Part shown: positions 4,845 to 59,400 of the stretch, one piece after another
Layout: every line of letters starts with the position of its first letter
How positions within the stretch are numbered: position 1 is the first letter of the stretch
Source of the DNA: Octopus sinensis
Lineage: Eukaryota
Assembly: GCF_006345805.1 (NCBI RefSeq)
Contig: NC_043003.1
Span: forward strand, 19,096,001 to 19,160,000
Reading direction: 5' to 3'
Length of the DNA stretch: 64,000 bases
Notes under the pieces: generated by a model
What the model saw: only the letters and a program-made list of their open reading frames with translations
What the model was told of the DNA's origin: nothing
Database searches by the model: none
Program-made: the position numbers and the translations under genes

Positions 4845-4917
4845 CATAGCATAGCTCAGTCGGTAGAGCATCAGACTTTTAATCTGAGGGTCGTGGGTTC
4901 ATGTCCCTCTGCAGGTG
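4845..4917 (+). pseudogene. tRNA-Lys(UUU)-like sequence with defective acceptor stem
   Basis: D arm TAGCTCAGTCGGTAGAGCA, perfect anticodon arm TCAGA-CTTTTAA-TCTGA (anticodon 4878-4880), T arm GTGGG-TTCATGT-CCCTC. The acceptor CATAGCA/TGCAGGT has only 3 WC pairs plus one G.U. Confidence 0.8.
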
Positions 4918-7862: not shown

Positions 7863-7934
7863 TCACTGGTACAGGTGCTGGTGTTGATATATATATAATA
7901 TATAATTTAAAATATGTTATTATTTTGATTGCCT

Positions 7935-7994
7935 CGATAACTGATGAGATGCTGGTTTCTGCCCTGACATCCGAAACTCAGAGTCTTATTATCG
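7935..7994 (+). ncRNA. type I hammerhead ribozyme motif, sense in C2CD5 intron
   Basis: CGATAA-CTGATGA-GATG..CATC(C)-GAA-ACT/cag/AGT-C^-TTATT(ATCG). Predicted cleavage after 7985. Confidence 0.75.
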
Positions 7995-8363
7995 CAACCG
8001 AATAATTGTCACATATTATTTTACAAATAAATTCCTCTATTTTACATAATATTGAGGTCTCTTTCATTCTTTTGTTGTCTTACCATTACTATTAACATAA
8101 TATATAATTTAGATATGCTATAAAATTTATAACTGCTATAAAATTCATCTATGCTGTAATTTTAATATACTATAAATTTTATAATTCATATATATATAAT
8201 ATAATTCAAATATATAACTTAGTAACAAATATTCAAGTTACATTAGATGTTATCATATTTTAAATGTGAAAACTGTAAAACATTGAATAGTTTTGATATG
8301 CTTCAAATCTTTCCCCTTCTTTGAGATCATCTAACTTGAATCTTTTATCCCATCTGTTGATAG

Positions 8364-8954: not shown

Positions 8955-9558
8955 ATTATTCTATGTTTGACTTTTGCTTTATATTTGTACAAGTTGGCTC
9001 CAAGTCTCACCCAGAGACTTCAAGAGACAACAGGTTGGAAGTTCACGTTATGCCTAGTGTGCCATATATTTGGGGGGTTTTTTAGTGTTGTACTAGTGAA
9101 TATCTAATAAAAAAAAAATTGTTTGTTTTAAACCTTGAGATTACGTAGAAAGTATTTTGCGTAGGATATAAGCAGTTCCATGAGCACTATTTTTTGAATT
9201 TCTGCCATTTTGGGGTTTCCTGGTATCTGAGTTAGGTAGCAATCAGACCCTTTTGCTATCATTCCCAGGGCACCTATGACAACAGGTATTGTTTTAGTCT
9301 TCAGGTTCCACATTTTGCTGATTTCTATTTCGAGATCTTCATATTTGCTCAGTTTTTGGTAGGTCTTGACAGATACGTTTATATCGATTGGGACAGTCAT
9401 ATCAATGAGGAGGCATGTTTGAAGTCTTTCAATATGATGTCTGGCCTATTTGCATCTATCTTTCTGTCAGTTTGAATGGTGAAGTTCCAGAGGAGTGAGA
9501 TGTGGTCATTTTCAAGCACTGAAGGTGGTTTGTGTTCCCACCAGTGTTTTTTGGGTGG

Positions 9559-9609: not shown

Positions 9610-10255
9610 GGCAGCGAGCTGGCAGAAACATTAACATGCTGGTTGGAATGCTTAACAGTATTTCATTCATCTCCACATTCTGAGTTCAAATTCTGCCAAG
9701 GTCGACTTTGCCTTTCATCCTTTCAGGGTTGATAAATTAAACACCAGTTGAGTACTGGGGTCGATGTAATTGACTAGTCCTCTCCCCCAAAAACTTCAGG
9801 CCTTGTGCCTATAGTAGAAAGGATTATTATTATTATTATTATTATTATTCCTCTTCTTATCCTTTTTATCCCTCTATTTCTCAAGATATTATTATTAAAT
9901 TCTCTGCGCTATAAATTGCAATTTCATTCAAGTATTATTTTTGAATTTTTGTTTGAGGAATTCTGCAAAGGAGGTCCCATACATGTTTACTATATGTGTA
10001 TACCTGTTTTGAATTTATTATATTTTTGATATTAATATTTATATTCATAATGTATTTCCTATTCTGTAATCAAACACATGCAGCATGGAATTAAAAATAT
10101 ACCAAACTTTTCACTTTTGTAATACATACATGTGTGTATGTATATATTTTTATTTTCATTGAAAATGCTTTCACTGTTCTCATTTTGTTAACGGCTAGGC
10201 GTTCAGGCGAGTATACTGGCATTGATGTGGCAACATTTGAAATACTGTCTAGGTA

Positions 10256-10328
10256 AATGCAGCTGATGAAGACTGATCAAATTTACGTTGTCAAACGTAT
10301 TTGAAGAGTCAGAAACCAGTCCTGCATT
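10256..10328 (+). ncRNA. type I hammerhead ribozyme motif, sense in C2CD5 intron
   Basis: AATGCAG-CTGATGA-(A)GACT..long stem..AGTC(A)-GAA-AC/ca/GT-C^-CTGCATT. Perfect 7-bp stem I; predicted cleavage after 10321. Confidence 0.8.
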
Positions 10329-10510
10329 ATCCGATTCTAGGTTGTCCATTTATCAAATGTTCTTCCTAGAGGTAAGGCAAATTTTTCATGTTTGTTGCAC
10401 ACACACGTCTTTGCTAGTAAATACGCAGTGAAGCTATACAATAGTGTCGTATTTGTATCAATTGCTATTTTCCAGTAAATATTGGTGCCTTGTTGTACCA
10501 CTCATCTGTT

Positions 10511-10568
<58 letters not shown>

Positions 10569-10627
10569 ATTTAAGCTAGCACTTACCATTTTCTGGTAAT
10601 ATATATGACATTTTTTTTGCATTTCAG

Positions 10628-10702
10628 ATGCGTGGTATGAATGGTCTTTTTGGACTTGTAGTCCATATCACAGTTGGAGAAACAATGTTAGCTGGAATAG
10701 CT
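10628..10702 (+). CDS. C2CD5: C2CD5 exon 7 in window
   Basis: tttcag|ATG...GCT|gtgagt. MRGMNGLFGLVVHITVGETMLAGIA. Confidence 0.95.
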
Positions 10703-11920
10703 GTGAGTATCTTTAAAACTTATTAATTCAGTACATTCCTAATATTTCATTTTAATTTACCTTCTACAAGGCAGTGTGCAAGTGTGTGAAGCATGGTTTT
10801 GTTGCTGTTATTTTTACATGTAAAATAAAGTAAGTTCTCCGTATACACATGCAAAGAGTCTGGATTTAACTGTTGTTACATCCATATCACAAATATATAT
10901 TTTGCTTGACTTTTCGTAGGGTATGTATTGATGGGTAATCAGTCTTGTTGACTTTCTAATAGGATTTAGTACTTATCATTAACTCTTAGGTGCAGTGAGG
11001 CAGCTTGAGATTAGATGTATTTTCTAGAAAGACAACAAAATACCGGCAGTAGATTTGAACTTATTACTCTTGAGCAGGCTGTTGAAATACCTTATCCACT
11101 TTGCCATTTCATTTGTAGCTCTGCAGCATCAGACATCCCCTACTTCCCCATTCACTCCTGGCCCCACTGCTTCAGTTATTCCTAACCACCTTCATACCTT
11201 GAAGGTCCACCCTGACACCTCATCACCACTCTTTTCTTATCACTTTCCAGCTTCACCTCATCGCTCTCCCCTCTCTTCTAAAATGTGTAGTCATGTAGCT
11301 CCTCCATGGCTAGAAACCTGTTCTCCTCTGGCCCTTTTCTCTTACATTTTAATCCCCTCTACTCCCTTATCTCCCAGCATAAAGCTTCCTGCATCTGGGT
11401 TTGTACTCTTGCAGGTTGCATGGCAATCTCGCTAGTGCTTGTGGCATGGGGGGAAAAAAAAAGCACCCAGTACTCACAGAAAAGTGGTTGGCATTAGGGA
11501 GGGCATCAAGCTGTAGAAACCATGTTGAAGCATACACTGGAACATAGTGCAGTTCTTTGCACCTACTGGATCCTGTCAAACCATCCAACCCATGTCAACA
11601 TGGAAGTTAAATGATGACAATGACGATACACTGATACACTGTGATTTAGGTTAAAGTACTTGCATAAACTTGATGATGATGATGATGCTGCTGCACACAC
11701 CACACACCTACACCAGCCTTCCACATAGTTCTTAGTCAATTCATTTGATCAACTTCTCTTGTTCCACTCTACAAAGTATTGTCTTTGCACTTTGACGAAA
11801 TAAATAACTTTCTAGTTGTTGTTGTCTAATTTTCTTTTTTTTTCTTTTCTTTTCTTCTTTATTGCTCTAACTATTGTTTATGAAACCCTTCTGCTATTCT
11901 CTTCATTGTTCTATTTTCAG

Positions 11921-17450: not shown

Positions 17451-17573
17451 GTTGATGATGCAAAAGATGAAACTGTATCCTTGATTTTAGATGACTTCAC
17501 AGCTCCAGAAGGATTTGAAATATGCAATACAGAAGTACTTCCAGGAGTGACCAACATTGTTTGTAATCTACAG
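17451..17573 (+). CDS. C2CD5: C2CD5 exon 11 in window
   Basis: cttcag|GTT...CAG|gtaagc. VDDAKDETVSLILDDFTAPEGFEICNTEVLPGVTNIVCNLQ. Confidence 0.93.
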
Positions 17574-18572: not shown

Positions 18573-18910
18573 GTGTTTGAGAAGACTTCTATAGATTCCA
18601 TAGGCAGCGAGGCTCACCAATGGAGAAGTTCTTAACTAGATCAAGCTGAAACTGTCGCTAGAAGCTAGGATCACCAAGTATAGATTGACATATTTTGGTC
18701 ATATTATGCAGAGAAAATCCCTGGAGAAGGACATCATGCTCAGTGGCAAGAGAGCAAGAGGCCAACCAAGAACTCGCTGGCTTGACACCATCAAGAGTGA
18801 CACAGGAATGGACATAGCCAATTTGAAAGAAGTGACCCAGGATAGAACTGATCCATCAAGTAACCAAGAGTTGACTTTGATTGAGCGAATAGATAGATAG
18901 ATAGACAGAA
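18573..18910 (+). mobile_element. RTE LINE 3' end, same family as 58325-59400
   Basis: YFGHIMQRKSLEKDIML..RGQPRTRWLDTIKSDTGM; ends in (ATAG)n; highly similar to the reverse complement of 58330-58670. Confidence 0.85.
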
Positions 18911-27553: not shown

Positions 27554-28355
27554 AGAACTGTGAGCTCACTGGGTAAAACGGTTAGCTGCATTTCATTTGT
27601 CTTTACGATCTGAGTTCAAATTCTGCCAATATATATGGTTTATTTAAAGTGTGGTATGGAAGGGTGAAGGCACATAGCTCAGTGGTTAGAGCATCAGGCT
27701 CACAATCTTGAGGTAGTGTGTTCAATTCCCAGACTGTGTGTTGTGTTCTTGAGCAAGACACTATATTTCACGTTACTCCAGTTCACTCAGCTGTAGAAAT
27801 GGGTTGCGACGTCACTGGTGCCAAGCCTTATCGGGCTTTGCCTTTCCTTTGCATAACATCAGTGGTGTGGAGAGGGGAGGCTGGTATGCATGGGCAACTG
27901 CTGGTCTTCTATAAACAACCTTGCCCGGACTTGTGCCTGGGAGGGTAACATTCTAGGTGCAATCCCATGGTCAGTCATGACCGAAGGGGGTCTCAGGTCC
28001 TTTGAAATACAAGTACAACTCATTTTTGCCATCTGAGTGGCGTGGATCAATGTGAAATAAAGTGTCTTGCTCAAGAACTCAATGTGCCACCATGTATCAA
28101 ACTCACAACCTTACAATCCTGAGCCGAACACCTTAGCCACGTGCCTGATTGACATAACGAGTAATAAAACAATTGATTATTTATTTGGTTAACTAATTGA
28201 CAAATAATAAAATAAAGAAGTAAAAAAAAACCCCAGTGTTTCTGTTTATTAATTGGTATAATGACCATCCCAAGATACAGCAAAACAGTATTTATGTATT
28301 TTAAAAGCCTTCTGTTGTAATTTATCTTATGTCTTGTAATATTGGTTAATTTCAG

Positions 28356-56961: not shown

Positions 56962-56989
56962 GAGAAAGAAGCAACAAGAATGGATTAGT

Positions 56990-57080
56990 TTTTAGTACAA
57001 TTGTTTCATACAAAGACAGGCTTTATTACAAGTTGCAAAAATTGCAGCAGATAAAAGTGTCCCGTACTCATCAGCTAAAA
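56990..57080 (-). ncRNA. type I hammerhead ribozyme, apparently intact
   Basis: Minus: TTTTAG-CTGATGA-GTACGGGACA..TGTCTTTGTAT-GAA-AC/AATT/GT-A^-CTAAAA. All core nucleotides present; stem III is the 8-nt palindrome ACAATTGT. Sits in an about 190-nt element between two (TA)n tracts. Confidence 0.85.
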
Positions 57081-57194
57081 TACATTTGAGTTCTCTAGAC
57101 ATCTTAGTGGGTGAGGTTATACTCATGAAATATTGGAGATAGTTCCATTAGAGGCAGATATATATATATATATATGCATAAACATATAACATAA

Positions 57195-58324: not shown

Positions 58325-59400
58325 TAGATGTATCTATCTATCCGCTCAGTCGATGTTGACTCTCGGTTACTCGATGGATCAGTGTCCTCCAATCAGTTCT
58401 ATCCTGGGCCGCTTCTTTCAGATTGGCTATGCCCATTCCGGTATCACTCTTGATGGTGTCAAGCCAACAGGTTCTTGGTCGGCCTCTTCCTCTCTTGCCA
58501 CTGACCATTCAGAGCATGATGTCCTTCTCCAGGGATTTTCTCCGCATAATATGACCAAAATATGCTAATCTATGCTTGGTGATCCTAGCTTCTAGTGACA
58601 TTTTCGGCCTGATCTGCTTAAGAACTTCTCCATTGGTGAGCCTCGCTGTCCATGGAATCCGTAGAAGTCTTCTCCAACATCAAAGCTCGAATGCATTAAG
58701 TCTCTTCTGGTCAGCTTTCTTTAGTGTCCAGGTCTTGCATCCATATGTTGCTATTGGGAAGACAATTGCATTCACCAATCTGCATTTGGTAGCGAGTCTG
58801 ATGTCTCTACTCTTCCAGACCCTGCTCATGCTGACCATTGCCTCTCTGCCTAGTACTATCCGCTGTCTTATTTCTGGAGTGCAGTCACCATCTCGATTTA
58901 TTCTGGAGCCAAGGAAGATGAAATCATCAACCACTTCGATCTCTTCATTATCGATCTTGATACTGATGTTTGTTGTGGCTGCTGTTGACATGATCTTCGT
59001 TTTCTTAACATTGAGGTACAGCCCAAATTTCTCACTCTCTTTCTTGACCAGCAGGACAAGATCCTCCAGATCTTTACCACTCTCCGCCAGCAGGGTTGTA
59101 TCATCTGCATAGCGAAGGTTATTGATATTTCTTCCTCCAATCCTCACTCCAATGCTGCTATCCTCCAGGCCTGCATTCCTCATGACCTTTTCAGCGTACA
59201 TGTCGAAGGCTGCTGGTGACAGGATGCAACCTTGCCGAGTGCCTTTTCCAATCTCAAACTAATCAGTGTCACCATATGGTGTCCGTACTGTAGCCTCTTG
59301 GTTTTGATAGAGTGATCTAATAAGCTGGATAAGGTGTTAAGGTGTTCCCATTTCCTCCAGATATTTCCATAACTTGTCATGATCAATTGTTGAAAGTGCA
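58325..59400 (-). mobile_element. 5'-truncated RTE (BovB-like) LINE: RT domain to 3' end
   Basis: IDHDKLWKYLEEMG..RQGCILSP..NNLRYADDTTLLAES..FLG..YGCKTWTLKKADQKRLNAFEL..YFGHIMRR. A few stops and frameshifts; (ATAG)n tail. Confidence 0.95.

What the first reader, a model, noticed from the sequence alone, without database searches (positions are those of the whole stretch)
10256..10328. Sense-strand hammerhead in the C2CD5 intron before exon 10628
Perfect 7-bp stem I (AAUGCAG/CUGCAUU), intact core and a long stem II (GACU/AGUC, UCAAA/UUUGA, UACG/CGUA). GUC site after 10321. Stem III ACCAGU is one base from the palindrome ACUAGU, and an A.A apposition sits next to the core. It is transcribed within the pre-mRNA about 300 nt upstream of an acceptor, so cleavage could affect splicing or RNA turnover (inference). 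The two imperfections may be decay, attenuation or family features.
Basis: partly seen in the sequence, partly recalled or inferred. Interest (0 to 1): 0.7.

Follow-up and report, generated by a model that had tools for sequence, protein, structure and literature searches.

The report
Decayed transposon hammerhead in C2CD5 intron
The hammerhead ribozyme motif is really there, but it is one worn, solitary copy of a ~430-bp mobile element present in hundreds to thousands of copies in this genome, and this copy has lost the small palindrome the family's ribozyme needs to pair up and cut, so it is most likely an inert passenger in the intron.

Summary
Every coordinate of the motif checks out. It is a type-I hammerhead on the sense strand of a C2CD5-like gene, with its GUC site 306 nt before the acceptor of exon 10628-10704. 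A descriptor scan expects 0.03 such motifs per window.

It is not a gene-specific element. It is position 164-236 of a ~430-bp, 35% GC, non-coding dispersed repeat. The genome holds at least 331 near-intact hammerheads of this family and at least 1,910 candidate matches to its 3' half.

The copies show variable 5' truncation and fixed TA-rich 3' ends. Many are longer than one unit, sit beside partial tandem or inverted copies, or end in (TA)n. At least 18 are true tandem dimers or trimers. These are Penelope-like-element insertion signatures, so the family is a retrozyme-like non-autonomous element.

The family's helix III is A-CCGG-U, a perfect palindrome, not ACUAGU. The consensus folds into the classical double hammerhead, 5.9 kcal/mol below two monomers. 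The window copy carries CCGG>CCAG, one of five CpG transitions in it, which puts that dimer 5.6 kcal/mol above two monomers. No partner copy lies in the window.

The A.A next to the core is a family trait.

Verdict: an ordinary decayed transposon relic. A role in splicing is unsupported.

The parts
10126..10507 (+). One 5'-truncated or diverged monomer copy of a ~430-bp non-coding retroelement unit (consensus positions c38-c415). The 3' end runs on into a TA-rich spacer up to about 10520.
   Evidence: BLAST of the family consensus against the window gives 361/382 identities (94.5%). Five of the 17 substitutions are CpG transitions. It is the only copy of this family in the window.
10256..10328 (+). 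Type-I hammerhead motif (c164-c236 of the element), on the element's sense strand and the gene's sense strand.
   Evidence: The same motif is present in all family copies.
10256..10262 (+). Stem I, 5' strand AAUGCAG. It pairs with 10322-10328. GG 10252-10253 could pair with CC 10331-10332 beyond a 2x2 internal loop.
   Evidence: 96% of cells paired in helix 1.
10263..10270 (+). Core CUGAUGA (C3-A9) plus an extra A between A9 and the G-C pair of helix II.
   Evidence: CUGAUGA is near-invariant (41 of 42 aligned copies) and the extra A is present in 39 of 42. [quoted passage not shown]
10271..10310 (+). Long helix II: GACU/AGUC, internal loop GA/AG, UCAAA/UUUGA, UU bulge, UACGUU/AACGUA, loop GUCA.
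   Evidence: 95% of cells paired in helix 2.
10311..10315 (+). An extra A facing A10270, followed by core GAAA (G12-A15.1).
   Evidence: The extra base is U in subfamily A, giving an A-U pair.
10315..10320 (+). Helix III region ACCAGU. The family consensus is ACCGGU: one A-U pair capped by the palindromic tetraloop CCGG. G>A at 10318 is a CpG transition that breaks the palindrome.
   Evidence: The same change is seen in 10 of 49 other sampled copies, on differing haplotypes, so it is recurrent decay.
10321..10322 (+). Predicted scissile bond, after C17 of GUC.
   Evidence: Position follows from the hammerhead consensus applied. Cleavage was not tested.
10322..10328 (+). Stem I, 3' strand CUGCAUU.
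10515..10570 (.). (TA)n microsatellite abutting the element's 3' end. It is the likely insertion target or priming site.
   Evidence: Most family copies end in TA repeats, and 3' ends cluster at c425-430 (49 of 78 fragments). A (TA)n insertion bias of PLEs is described in PMC8557442.
10628..10704 (+). Downstream C2CD5-like exon (MRGMNGLFGLVVHITVGETMLAGIA), with acceptor ...tttcag| and donor |gtgagt.
   Evidence: Weak Pfam PF23025 hit (16.3 bits, below the 29.1 cut-off). Neighbouring + strand exons hit PF23025 (44.3 bits) and PF23028 (29.4 bits), both above their cut-offs.

Best explanation
The motif is the hammerhead of a short (~430 bp, 35% GC, non-coding) non-autonomous retroelement family. 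The family spread through this genome using the machinery of Penelope-like elements (PLEs). It is a cephalopod counterpart of the metazoan 'non-LTR retrozymes'.

How the family most likely works (inferred from the anatomy and from published retrozyme and PLE work):
1. Transcripts containing two or more units fold two hammerheads into a double hammerhead. The palindromic loop 3 (A-CCGG-U) forms a 6-bp intermolecular helix III, and the stem I strands swap between the two copies.
2. Each site is cut after GUC, releasing unit-length RNA.
3. A host tRNA ligase can circularise that RNA.
4. A PLE reverse transcriptase and GIY-YIG endonuclease copy it into TA-rich DNA. This gives fixed 3' ends, variable 5' truncation and copies longer than one unit.

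What is shown: the window copy is a solitary, 5'-truncated, roughly 5% diverged insertion that happens to lie in sense orientation in a C2CD5-like intron. A CpG>CpA transition has destroyed its loop-3 palindrome.

What is predicted: this copy is a poor or inactive ribozyme, and a neutral passenger in the pre-mRNA.
For: Repeat membership:
- The hammerhead region has at least 655 candidate matches genome-wide, and the best 40 are 95-98% identical.
- The element's 3' half has at least 1,910 candidates.
- 331 hammerheads match both flanking blocks with at most 2 mismatches. The reversed-pattern control gives 0.

Retroelement behaviour:
- Of 78 fragments in 62 loci, 49 end at c425-430 and 17 end at c56-71, while 5' ends are scattered.
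- 30 fragments are longer than one unit, up to 892 nt.

PLE-type architecture:
- 24 of 52 loci carry an upstream partial tandem copy, an inverted 5'-truncated neighbour, or a c1-57 'tail'. TA microsatellites sit at the ends.
- This matches the PLE insertion description in PMC8557442.

Tandem copies:
- 18 direct hammerhead pairs lie 346-376 nt apart, including trimers. The control gives 0.

PLE machinery is present:
- At least 147 GIY-YIG matches, several inside open frames of 780-883 aa.

Dimer design:
- For the consensus, the cofold MFE is exactly the double hammerhead, at -49.1 kcal/mol against -43.2 for two monomers.
- The window homodimer in that structure is -39.0 against -44.6 for two monomers.
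- The heterodimer with a consensus copy is -42.9 against -43.9.

Decay:
- 5 of the 14 consensus CpGs are mutated in the window copy, including the one in loop 3.
- In copies selected by their 3' half, the hammerhead differs from consensus by 6.7%, against 4-11% in the other regions.

Master-level constraint:
- The five hammerhead differences between subfamily consensuses spare the core, the GUC site and loop 3, and keep a 4-bp proximal helix II.

Published parallels:
- Metazoan type-I hammerheads with a 1-2 bp helix III and a palindromic loop act as dimers and sit in PLEs and retrozymes (PMC4209133; PMC7229834; preprint 10.64898/2026.07.22.740005).
Against: - No cleavage, circular RNA or expression data could be obtained here.
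- The family core is non-canonical. An A.A layer (A-U in subfamily A) lies between the core and the G-C pair of helix II.
- No copy reaches an Rfam gathering score. The best is 28.4 bits to HH9, against 52.
- PLE minimal hammerheads cleave poorly in vitro (PMC4209133).
- No covariation supports the stems, because the family is too young: the observed score equals the shuffled score.
- The hammerhead is not significantly better conserved than the rest of the element between subfamily consensuses (5/73 against 40/357 differences, p = 0.40).
- 5' ends do not pile up at the cleavage site, so cleavage of the templates is not visible in the DNA record.
- The autonomous partner was not found. Two sampled PLE ORF loci share no sequence with the element.
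- A heterodimer with an intact family transcript is only about 1 kcal/mol unfavourable, so residual cutting in trans cannot be excluded.
Confidence: 0.78

Rival explanations
1. The intronic copy is an active ribozyme that cuts the C2CD5 pre-mRNA about 300 nt upstream of the acceptor. It would act either alone or as a heterodimer with abundant family transcripts, and so would influence splicing or turnover.
For: - All 13 core nucleotides, a perfect 7-bp stem I and a stable stem II are intact.
- The motif is in sense orientation within the transcription unit.
- A heterodimer with a consensus copy keeps 5 of 6 helix III pairs and costs only about 1 kcal/mol relative to monomers.
- Amniote intronic hammerheads (HH9, HH10) are thought to be domesticated retroelement ribozymes (PMC6155905). 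The family's stem I and helix III bases resemble HH9.
Against: - It is one of hundreds of near-identical transposon copies.
- The loop-3 palindrome is lost by ordinary CpG decay, alongside four other CpG decays in the same copy.
- There is no partner copy in the window.
- The monomer MFE pairs core C3-U4-G5 with CAG of loop 3, which is an inactive fold. The G>A change strengthens that fold, from -21.6 to -22.3 kcal/mol.
- Monomeric hammerheads with a 1-bp helix III cleave poorly: 6% in 1 h for axolotl HHR_Amex1 (PMC7229834).
- From memory, not checked here: published reporter work found that slow intronic hammerheads do not disturb co-transcriptional splicing.
Confidence: 0.06
2. The family's hammerhead-like fold no longer cleaves at all, or never did. 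It would be kept as a structural module, for example for reverse-transcriptase recognition or RNA stability, and the extra A.A layer would mark loss of catalysis.
For: - The layer between the core and G10.1-C11.1 is non-canonical in every copy.
- All copies score below the Rfam gathering threshold.
- There is no excess of 5' ends at the cleavage site.
- PLE minimal hammerheads have low in vitro activity (PMC4209133).
- Naiad PLEs proliferate without hammerheads (PMC8557442).
Against: - The core CUGAUGA / GAAA / GUC and the CCGG palindrome are identical in both subfamily consensuses, which differ by 10.5% overall.
- The consensus dimer MFE is exactly the catalytic double-hammerhead topology.
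- An axolotl retrozyme hammerhead with a U.U mismatch at the base of helix II still cleaves, and cleaves better as a dimer (PMC7229834).
- A nucleotide between A9 and 10.1 is normal in PLE hammerheads.
Confidence: 0.2
3. The repeat is an ordinary LINE-mobilised SINE or a satellite, and the hammerhead resemblance is incidental to how it moves.
For: - Variable 5' truncation with a fixed 3' end and a simple-repeat tail is also typical of LINE-dependent SINEs.
- Octopus genomes hold very many unclassified SINE families (PMC13282606).
- No autonomous PLE sharing its sequence was found.
Against: - No tRNA, 5S or 7SL-like head: Rfam finds only HH9 within 10150-10450.
- Copies longer than one unit, partial tandems, inverted 5'-truncated neighbours and a detachable ~57-nt tail are PLE signatures, not SINE signatures (PMC8557442).
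- Three unrelated hammerhead-bearing repeats with palindromic or near-palindromic helix III regions occur in this one window; the two with sampled copies or flanks (7941 and 56990) also show PLE-style inverted pairs or (TA)n flanks.
Confidence: 0.05

Closest known systems
Metazoan non-LTR retrozymes (Cervera & de la Pena 2020, PMC7229834; Li, Clavereau & Pollet 2026 preprint 10.64898/2026.07.22.740005)
   Same: - Small, non-coding, low-GC units carrying one type-I hammerhead each.
- Occurs as tandem dimers and multimers plus many dispersed monomers.
- Helix III is too weak for monomeric cleavage.
- Proposed dependence on Penelope-like elements.
   Different: - The unit (~430 bp) is at or just above the 170-400 nt range first described.
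- Monomers and copies of one-to-two units dominate; only 18 clean tandems were found against 331 hammerheads.
- Helix II is a 40-nt extended arm, not a 4-6 bp hairpin.
- An extra A.A or A-U layer sits next to the core.
- Circular RNA is not shown here.
- No cephalopod family was found described in the searched literature.
Hammerheads of Penelope-like element pseudo-LTRs (Cervera & de la Pena 2014, PMC4209133)
   Same: - An extra nucleotide between A9 and 10.1, and a larger-than-usual helix II.
- Palindromic 15.2-16.2 / loop 3, implying action as a dimer.
- Massive genomic copy number.
- Insertion architecture of partial tandems, inverted truncated copies and a TA-rich target.
   Different: - This family keeps a long (6-7 bp) helix I with an internal loop, more like 'canonical' metazoan type-I motifs.
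- It has an additional unpaired or paired base on the 3' side of helix II.
- No RT/GIY-YIG ORF is attached, and no sequence link to an autonomous PLE was found.
Newt satellite 2 and axolotl HHR_Amex1/Amex2 hammerheads
   Same: - One base pair plus a palindromic tetraloop as helix III.
- Poor cleavage as a monomer and efficient cleavage as a double hammerhead in tandem transcripts.
- Amex2 tolerates a mismatch (U.U) at the base of helix II.
   Different: - Amphibian units form long satellite-like arrays; here the copies are mostly dispersed.
- The sequence is unrelated outside the core.
Rfam Hammerhead_HH9 (RF02275), the ultraconserved intronic hammerhead of amniote RECK
   Same: - Best-scoring Rfam family.
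- Shares UGCAG-CUGAUGA...GAAACC..GGUC-CUGCA.
- Also intronic and in sense orientation.
- HH9 is thought to be a domesticated retroelement hammerhead (PMC6155905).
   Different: - The score is 17.5 bits (window copy) or 28.4 bits (best family copy) against a gathering score of 52.
- HH9 is single-copy and conserved across amniotes, with a stable hairpin helix III.
- This motif is a multicopy transposon relic that has decayed.

Membership tests
Hammerhead ribozyme, type I | Conserved core C3-U4-G5-A6-N7-G8-A9, G12-A13-A14, A15.1-U16.1 and H17. | tested here: met
   CUGAUGA 10263-10269, GAAA 10312-15, U10320 and C10321. Of 42 aligned copies, CUGAUGA is intact in 41 (one has UUGAUGA) and GAAA in 40 (one GGAA, one GACA).
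Hammerhead ribozyme, type I | Three helices around the core, with helix I open and helices II and III closed. | tested here: met
   Helix I is 7 bp and helix II is about 15 bp with loops. Helix III is 1 bp plus a tetraloop, so it is only stable as a dimer.
Hammerhead ribozyme, type I | G10.1-C11.1 pair directly adjoining the core. | tested here: not met
   The G-C pair is separated from A9 and G12 by an A.A apposition, which is A-U in subfamily A. The 5' extra base has precedent in PLE hammerheads. For the 3' extra base, the papers read here gave no precedent.
Hammerhead ribozyme, type I | Reaches an Rfam hammerhead gathering score. | tested here: not met
   17.5 bits for the window copy and 28.4 bits for a subfamily A copy, against 52 for HH9. 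There is no hit to RF00163 at this locus.
Hammerhead ribozyme, type I | Site-specific self-cleavage giving 2',3'-cyclic phosphate and 5'-OH ends. | not testable with these tools
   Needs in vitro transcription or end-specific RNA sequencing.
Metazoan non-LTR retrozyme | Short non-coding unit of low GC with one type-I hammerhead per unit. | tested here: met
   The unit is 430 bp and 35.3% GC, with the hammerhead at c164-236. The stop-to-stop listing at a 55-aa floor shows only two short frames overlapping the window copy, 61 aa on the minus strand and 55 aa on the plus strand.
Metazoan non-LTR retrozyme | Occurs as head-to-tail tandem repeats, so that two hammerheads flank a unit. | tested here: met
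   Met for the family: 18 direct pairs about 430 bp apart, including trimers, with a control of 0. Not met for the window copy, which is a lone monomer.
Metazoan non-LTR retrozyme | Expressed as unit-length linear and circular RNA. | not testable with these tools
   No transcriptome data were accessible. Genomic copies longer than one unit are compatible with multimeric or circular templates but do not prove them.
Penelope-like-element-dependent (PLE-derived) sequence | PLE insertion architecture: partial tandems or pseudo-LTRs, an inverted 5'-truncated neighbour, a short tail, and a microsatellite (TA)n target. | tested here: met
   24 of 52 loci are complex in exactly these ways, and TA repeats lie at the 3' ends. 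Compared with PMC8557442.
Penelope-like-element-dependent (PLE-derived) sequence | Sequence homology to the pLTR or 3' end of an autonomous RT + GIY-YIG element in the same genome. | tested here: inconclusive
   GIY-YIG ORFs are abundant. The only two ORF-bearing loci examined (L091, L092, one family) share nothing with the element and show no hammerhead within the sampled flanks. Other PLE families were not examined.
Domesticated intronic hammerhead (HH9/HH10-like) | Single-copy, orthologous intronic position conserved across species under purifying selection. | tested here: not met
   The motif is multicopy. Its divergence matches the rest of the element, and this copy shows CpG decay. Orthologous introns of other octopods could not be reached with these tools.

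The most novel reading that the evidence does not exclude
The family is an active cephalopod retrozyme whose hammerhead works with an unusual extra A.A or A-U layer between the core and G10.1-C11.1 and a 40-nt helix II. The sense-oriented intronic copy at 10256-10328, although it has lost its own palindrome, would still be cut in trans as a heterodimer with abundant intact family transcripts. That would couple the fate of the C2CD5 pre-mRNA to retrozyme expression.
Probability: 0.04. Interest if true: 0.65.

Novelty: new member of a known kind. Interest (0 to 1): 0.28.

Why it matters
For this locus it matters little. The motif is best treated as transposon annotation, not as a regulatory ribozyme of C2CD5.

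At genome level there are three points of interest.
- This octopus-sized genome carries several distinct, abundant hammerhead-bearing repeat families. At least one of them is extremely young.
- No description of hammerhead or retrozyme families in cephalopods was found in the searched literature.
- The family's core variant (an extra layer next to helix II, plus a very long helix II) is a cheap test case for how far the hammerhead consensus can stretch.

Sense-oriented intronic copies like this one are also the raw material from which amniote intronic hammerheads (HH9, HH10) are thought to have been domesticated.

Practically, any scan for 'intronic ribozymes' in cephalopods must first mask these families, or it will report hundreds of such hits.

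Tried and rejected
1. Covariation test on 42 distinct copies. The observed score equals the shuffled score because the family is too young, so the stems rest on thermodynamics and motif only.
2. Conservation test. In copies chosen by their 3' half, the hammerhead is not better conserved than the rest of the element (an earlier version was contaminated by flanks of truncated copies and was discarded). Between subfamily consensuses the difference is 5/73 against 40/357, p = 0.40.
3. A covariance model (R1) was built to count family members genome-wide, but the own genome cannot be searched with a model. IUPAC patterns were used instead.
4. Search for the autonomous partner. Pfam GIY-YIG on the genome gave at least 147 hits. 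Two ORF-bearing loci were fetched; they show no similarity to the element and no hammerhead. None of the GIY-YIG hits listed lies beside the family copies listed. The partner remains unidentified.
5. Test for run-off at the cleavage site. The 5' ends of 78 fragments show no spike at c230.
6. Whether ACCAGU marks a propagating sub-subfamily. Rejected, because the copies sharing it do not share the window copy's other variants.
7. Chance motif. Rejected.
8. tRNA- or 7SL-type SINE head. Nothing found in Rfam at a permissive E-value.
9. Orthologous intron in other octopods. No accessible collection holds cephalopod genomes, so this was not done.

Full report
**1. Observation**

The sequence at 10256-10328 (+) reads AAUGCAG | CUGAUGA | A | helix II (40 nt) | A | GAAA | CCAGUC | CUGCAUU.
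- Stem I is a perfect 7 bp.
- Helix II is GACU/AGUC, a 2x2 loop, UCAAA/UUUGA, a UU bulge, UACGUU/AACGUA, and a GUCA loop.

The RNA folds at -22.3 kcal/mol with z = -4.06. A descriptor I wrote (stem I at least 5 bp, CUGANGA, stem II at least 4 bp, GAAA, UH) finds three loci in the window, against 0.03 hits per dinucleotide shuffle. Rfam does not call it at gathering score. At a permissive threshold only HH9 (RF02275) matches, at 17.5 bits against 52.

**2. Gene context**

Open stretches on the + strand match Pfam families specific to C2CD5.
- PF23025 scores 44.3 bits (cut-off 29.1) near 1400-1540.
- PF23028 scores 29.4 bits (cut-off 27) near 17480-17560.
- The exon at 10628-10704 matches PF23025 weakly (16.3 bits).

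That exon has a clean acceptor (tttcag|) and donor (|gtgagt). So the motif lies on the sense strand of a C2CD5-like intron, 306 nt before the acceptor. I did not verify the species. The genome is 2.72 Gb in 13,516 contigs, which fits an octopus.

**3. It is a repeat**

- A 106-nt query around the motif has at least 655 candidate matches in the genome, and the 40 scored are 95-98% identical.
- The element's 3' half has at least 1,910 candidates.
- A two-block pattern (GCAGCTGATGAAGAC...CCGGTCCTGCATT, at most 2 mismatches) finds 331 hammerheads. The reversed control finds none.

Aligning 52 distinct loci gives a consensus of 415 nt plus a ~15-nt TA-rich spacer. The unit is 430 bp and 35% GC, with the hammerhead at c164-236. 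The window copy is c38-c415 at 10126-10507, 94.5% identical. It is the only copy of this family in the window.

**4. How the copies were made**

Of 78 fragments in 62 loci, 49 end at c425-430 and 17 end at c56-71. Their 5' ends are scattered, and 30 fragments exceed one unit, up to 892 nt. In 24 of 52 loci there is one of the following:
- an upstream 5'-truncated copy in direct tandem;
- an inverted 5'-truncated neighbour;
- a detached c1-57 'tail'.

TA microsatellites abut the ends. In the window this is (TA)n at 10515-10570. This is the insertion architecture described for Penelope-like elements: pseudo-LTRs, inverted truncated copies, a short tail and a microsatellite target (PMC8557442).

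True tandem dimers and trimers exist, with 18 direct pairs and a control of 0. GIY-YIG matches are abundant (at least 147), several inside 780-883-aa open frames, so PLE machinery is available. The two PLE loci I could examine are unrelated to the element, and the partner remains unknown.

The family therefore fits the published 'non-LTR retrozyme' kind: small non-coding type-I-hammerhead units related to PLE pLTRs (PMC7229834; 10.64898/2026.07.22.740005). I found no description of such families in cephalopods.

**5. The two 'imperfections'**

*(a) Helix III.* The family consensus is A-CCGG-U: one A-U pair capped by a palindromic tetraloop. This is the design that published work links to dimeric action.
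- Cofolding two consensus hammerheads gives, as the MFE, the classical double hammerhead. It has a 6-bp intermolecular helix III and swapped stem I strands, at -49.1 kcal/mol against -43.2 for two monomers.
- For the window copy (CCAG) the same structure costs -39.0 against -44.6 for two monomers.
- With a consensus partner it is -42.9 against -43.9.
- The monomer MFE pairs core C3-U4-G5 with loop 3, which is an inactive fold. The G>A change strengthens it slightly.

The change is a CpG>CpA transition. The copy has lost 5 of its 14 consensus CpGs. The same change occurs in 10 of 49 other copies on unrelated haplotypes. So it is ordinary recurrent decay, not attenuation, and the relevant palindrome is ACCGGU rather than ACUAGU.

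*(b) The A.A next to the core.* This is a family trait.
- Subfamilies B and C have A.A.
- Subfamily A, the commonest among intact copies and the one forming most tandems, has A-U there and shifts the 4-bp proximal helix by one register.
- An extra nucleotide between A9 and 10.1 is typical of PLE hammerheads.
- For the extra base on the 3' side, the papers read here gave no precedent. A second octopus family in this window also has one.
- An axolotl retrozyme hammerhead with a U.U at this position still cleaves.

**6. Selection**

- Copies chosen by their 3' half differ from consensus by 6.7% in the hammerhead, against 4-11% elsewhere. Individual copies therefore decay neutrally.
- The two subfamily consensuses differ at 45 of 430 positions, 5 of them in the hammerhead. 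None falls in the core, the GUC or loop 3, but the deficit is not significant (p = 0.40).
- Covariation is uninformative.

**7. Mechanism and verdict**

*Shown:* repeat membership, retroelement behaviour, PLE-type architecture, dimer-competent consensus, and decay of the window copy.

*Inferred from published retrozyme and PLE work:* multimeric transcripts cleave as double hammerheads, unit RNAs are circularised by a tRNA ligase, and a PLE RT/endonuclease copies them into TA-rich DNA.

*For this locus:* a lone, palindrome-less copy is expected to cleave poorly or not at all. I recall that slow intronic hammerheads do not disturb co-transcriptional splicing in reporter studies; this is from memory and was not checked. 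The 2026 preprint reports depletion of retrozymes from introns in Xenopus, so genic copies may be mildly deleterious in general. That says nothing specific about this one.

Using the O. vulgaris calibration (JC 0.065 to about 18 My), 3.7-5.5% divergence suggests an insertion roughly 10-16 My old. This is a rough estimate.

**8. What remains open**

- Cleavage activity of the family and of this copy.
- Existence of circular RNA.
- The autonomous partner.
- The state of the orthologous intron in other octopods.

None of these could be addressed with the tools at hand.

Noticed in passing
window 56990-57074 (-), insertion about 56966-57160 flanked by (TA)n on both sides: A third hammerhead-like motif, antisense to the gene: UUUUAG-CUGAUGA-GUAC...(about 60 nt)...GUAU-GAAAC-AAUU-GUA-CUAAAA. 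Its helix III is a perfect 8-nt palindrome, ACAAUUGU. It belongs to a very young repeat: at least 1,155 candidates, at least 21 copies 100% identical over 126 nt, the rest of those scored at 99%, and often in inverted pairs 0.5-5 kb apart. Rfam does not recognise it. This looks like a currently or very recently active PLE-type family.
   Followed up: partly
window 7941-7994 (+), repeat about 7921-8120: A second hammerhead-like motif: CUGAUGA-GAUG...CAUC-C-GAAAC-UCAGA-GUC. It sits in an older high-copy family (at least 1,284 candidates, 83-91% identity) whose copies often lie head-to-head as inverted pairs. The family consensus helix III, ACUCGGAGU, is near-palindromic. An unpaired C separates helix II from G12, the same oddity as the extra base in the 10256 family.
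   Followed up: partly
G000, e.g. C13:29988995-29989039, C16:25146363-25146408 and C16:25146794-25146839 (loci L081-L090): A fourth, unrelated hammerhead family passes the Rfam Hammerhead_1 gathering score (up to 48.2 bits): GUAC-CUGAAGAG-ACCC..GGGUC-GAAAC-AUGU-GUC-GUAC, with palindromic ACAUGU. One pair lies 431 bp apart. The first-look filter flagged 265,664 candidates but only 74 were scored.
   Followed up: partly
window 10370-10379 and 10464-10477 (c278-287 and c372-385 of the element): On its sense strand the element carries a strong 5' splice-site-like GAG|GUAAG(G/A) and, 104 nt downstream, a polypyrimidine-CAG acceptor-like site (cuauuuuccag|U). Both are kept in the two subfamily consensuses. 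PLEs are known to retain small introns (PMC4209133). In sense orientation inside the C2CD5 intron, these sites are a more conventional way than ribozyme cleavage for the insertion to perturb splicing. This was not tested.
   Followed up: no
G000 genome-wide, e.g. C6:12733272, C1:207477583, C3:65736423, C19:35627265, C10:27570372: There are many GIY-YIG endonuclease matches (at least 147 at E<=0.001 from 4,846 candidates). Several lie at the C-terminus of uninterrupted 780-883-aa frames that are nearly identical between loci. This indicates recently active canonical Penelope-like elements. The two loci examined have no hammerhead within about 2 kb downstream by a strict pattern.
   Followed up: partly
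window 4849-4912 (+) and 27671-27738 (+): Two tRNA-like matches to Rfam RF00005, at 52.5 and 29.5 bits, inside introns. These may be tRNA-derived SINE heads rather than tRNA genes, which I infer only from their intronic position. Not examined further.
   Followed up: no
window 58680-59258 (-), 18640-18900 (+), 9128-9445 (-): Open stretches with reverse-transcriptase-like sequence (for example ...NNLRYADDTTLLAES...) and LINE C-terminal-like sequence. They indicate LINE fragments in the same introns. I recognised these by eye and did not run them against a library.
   Followed up: no
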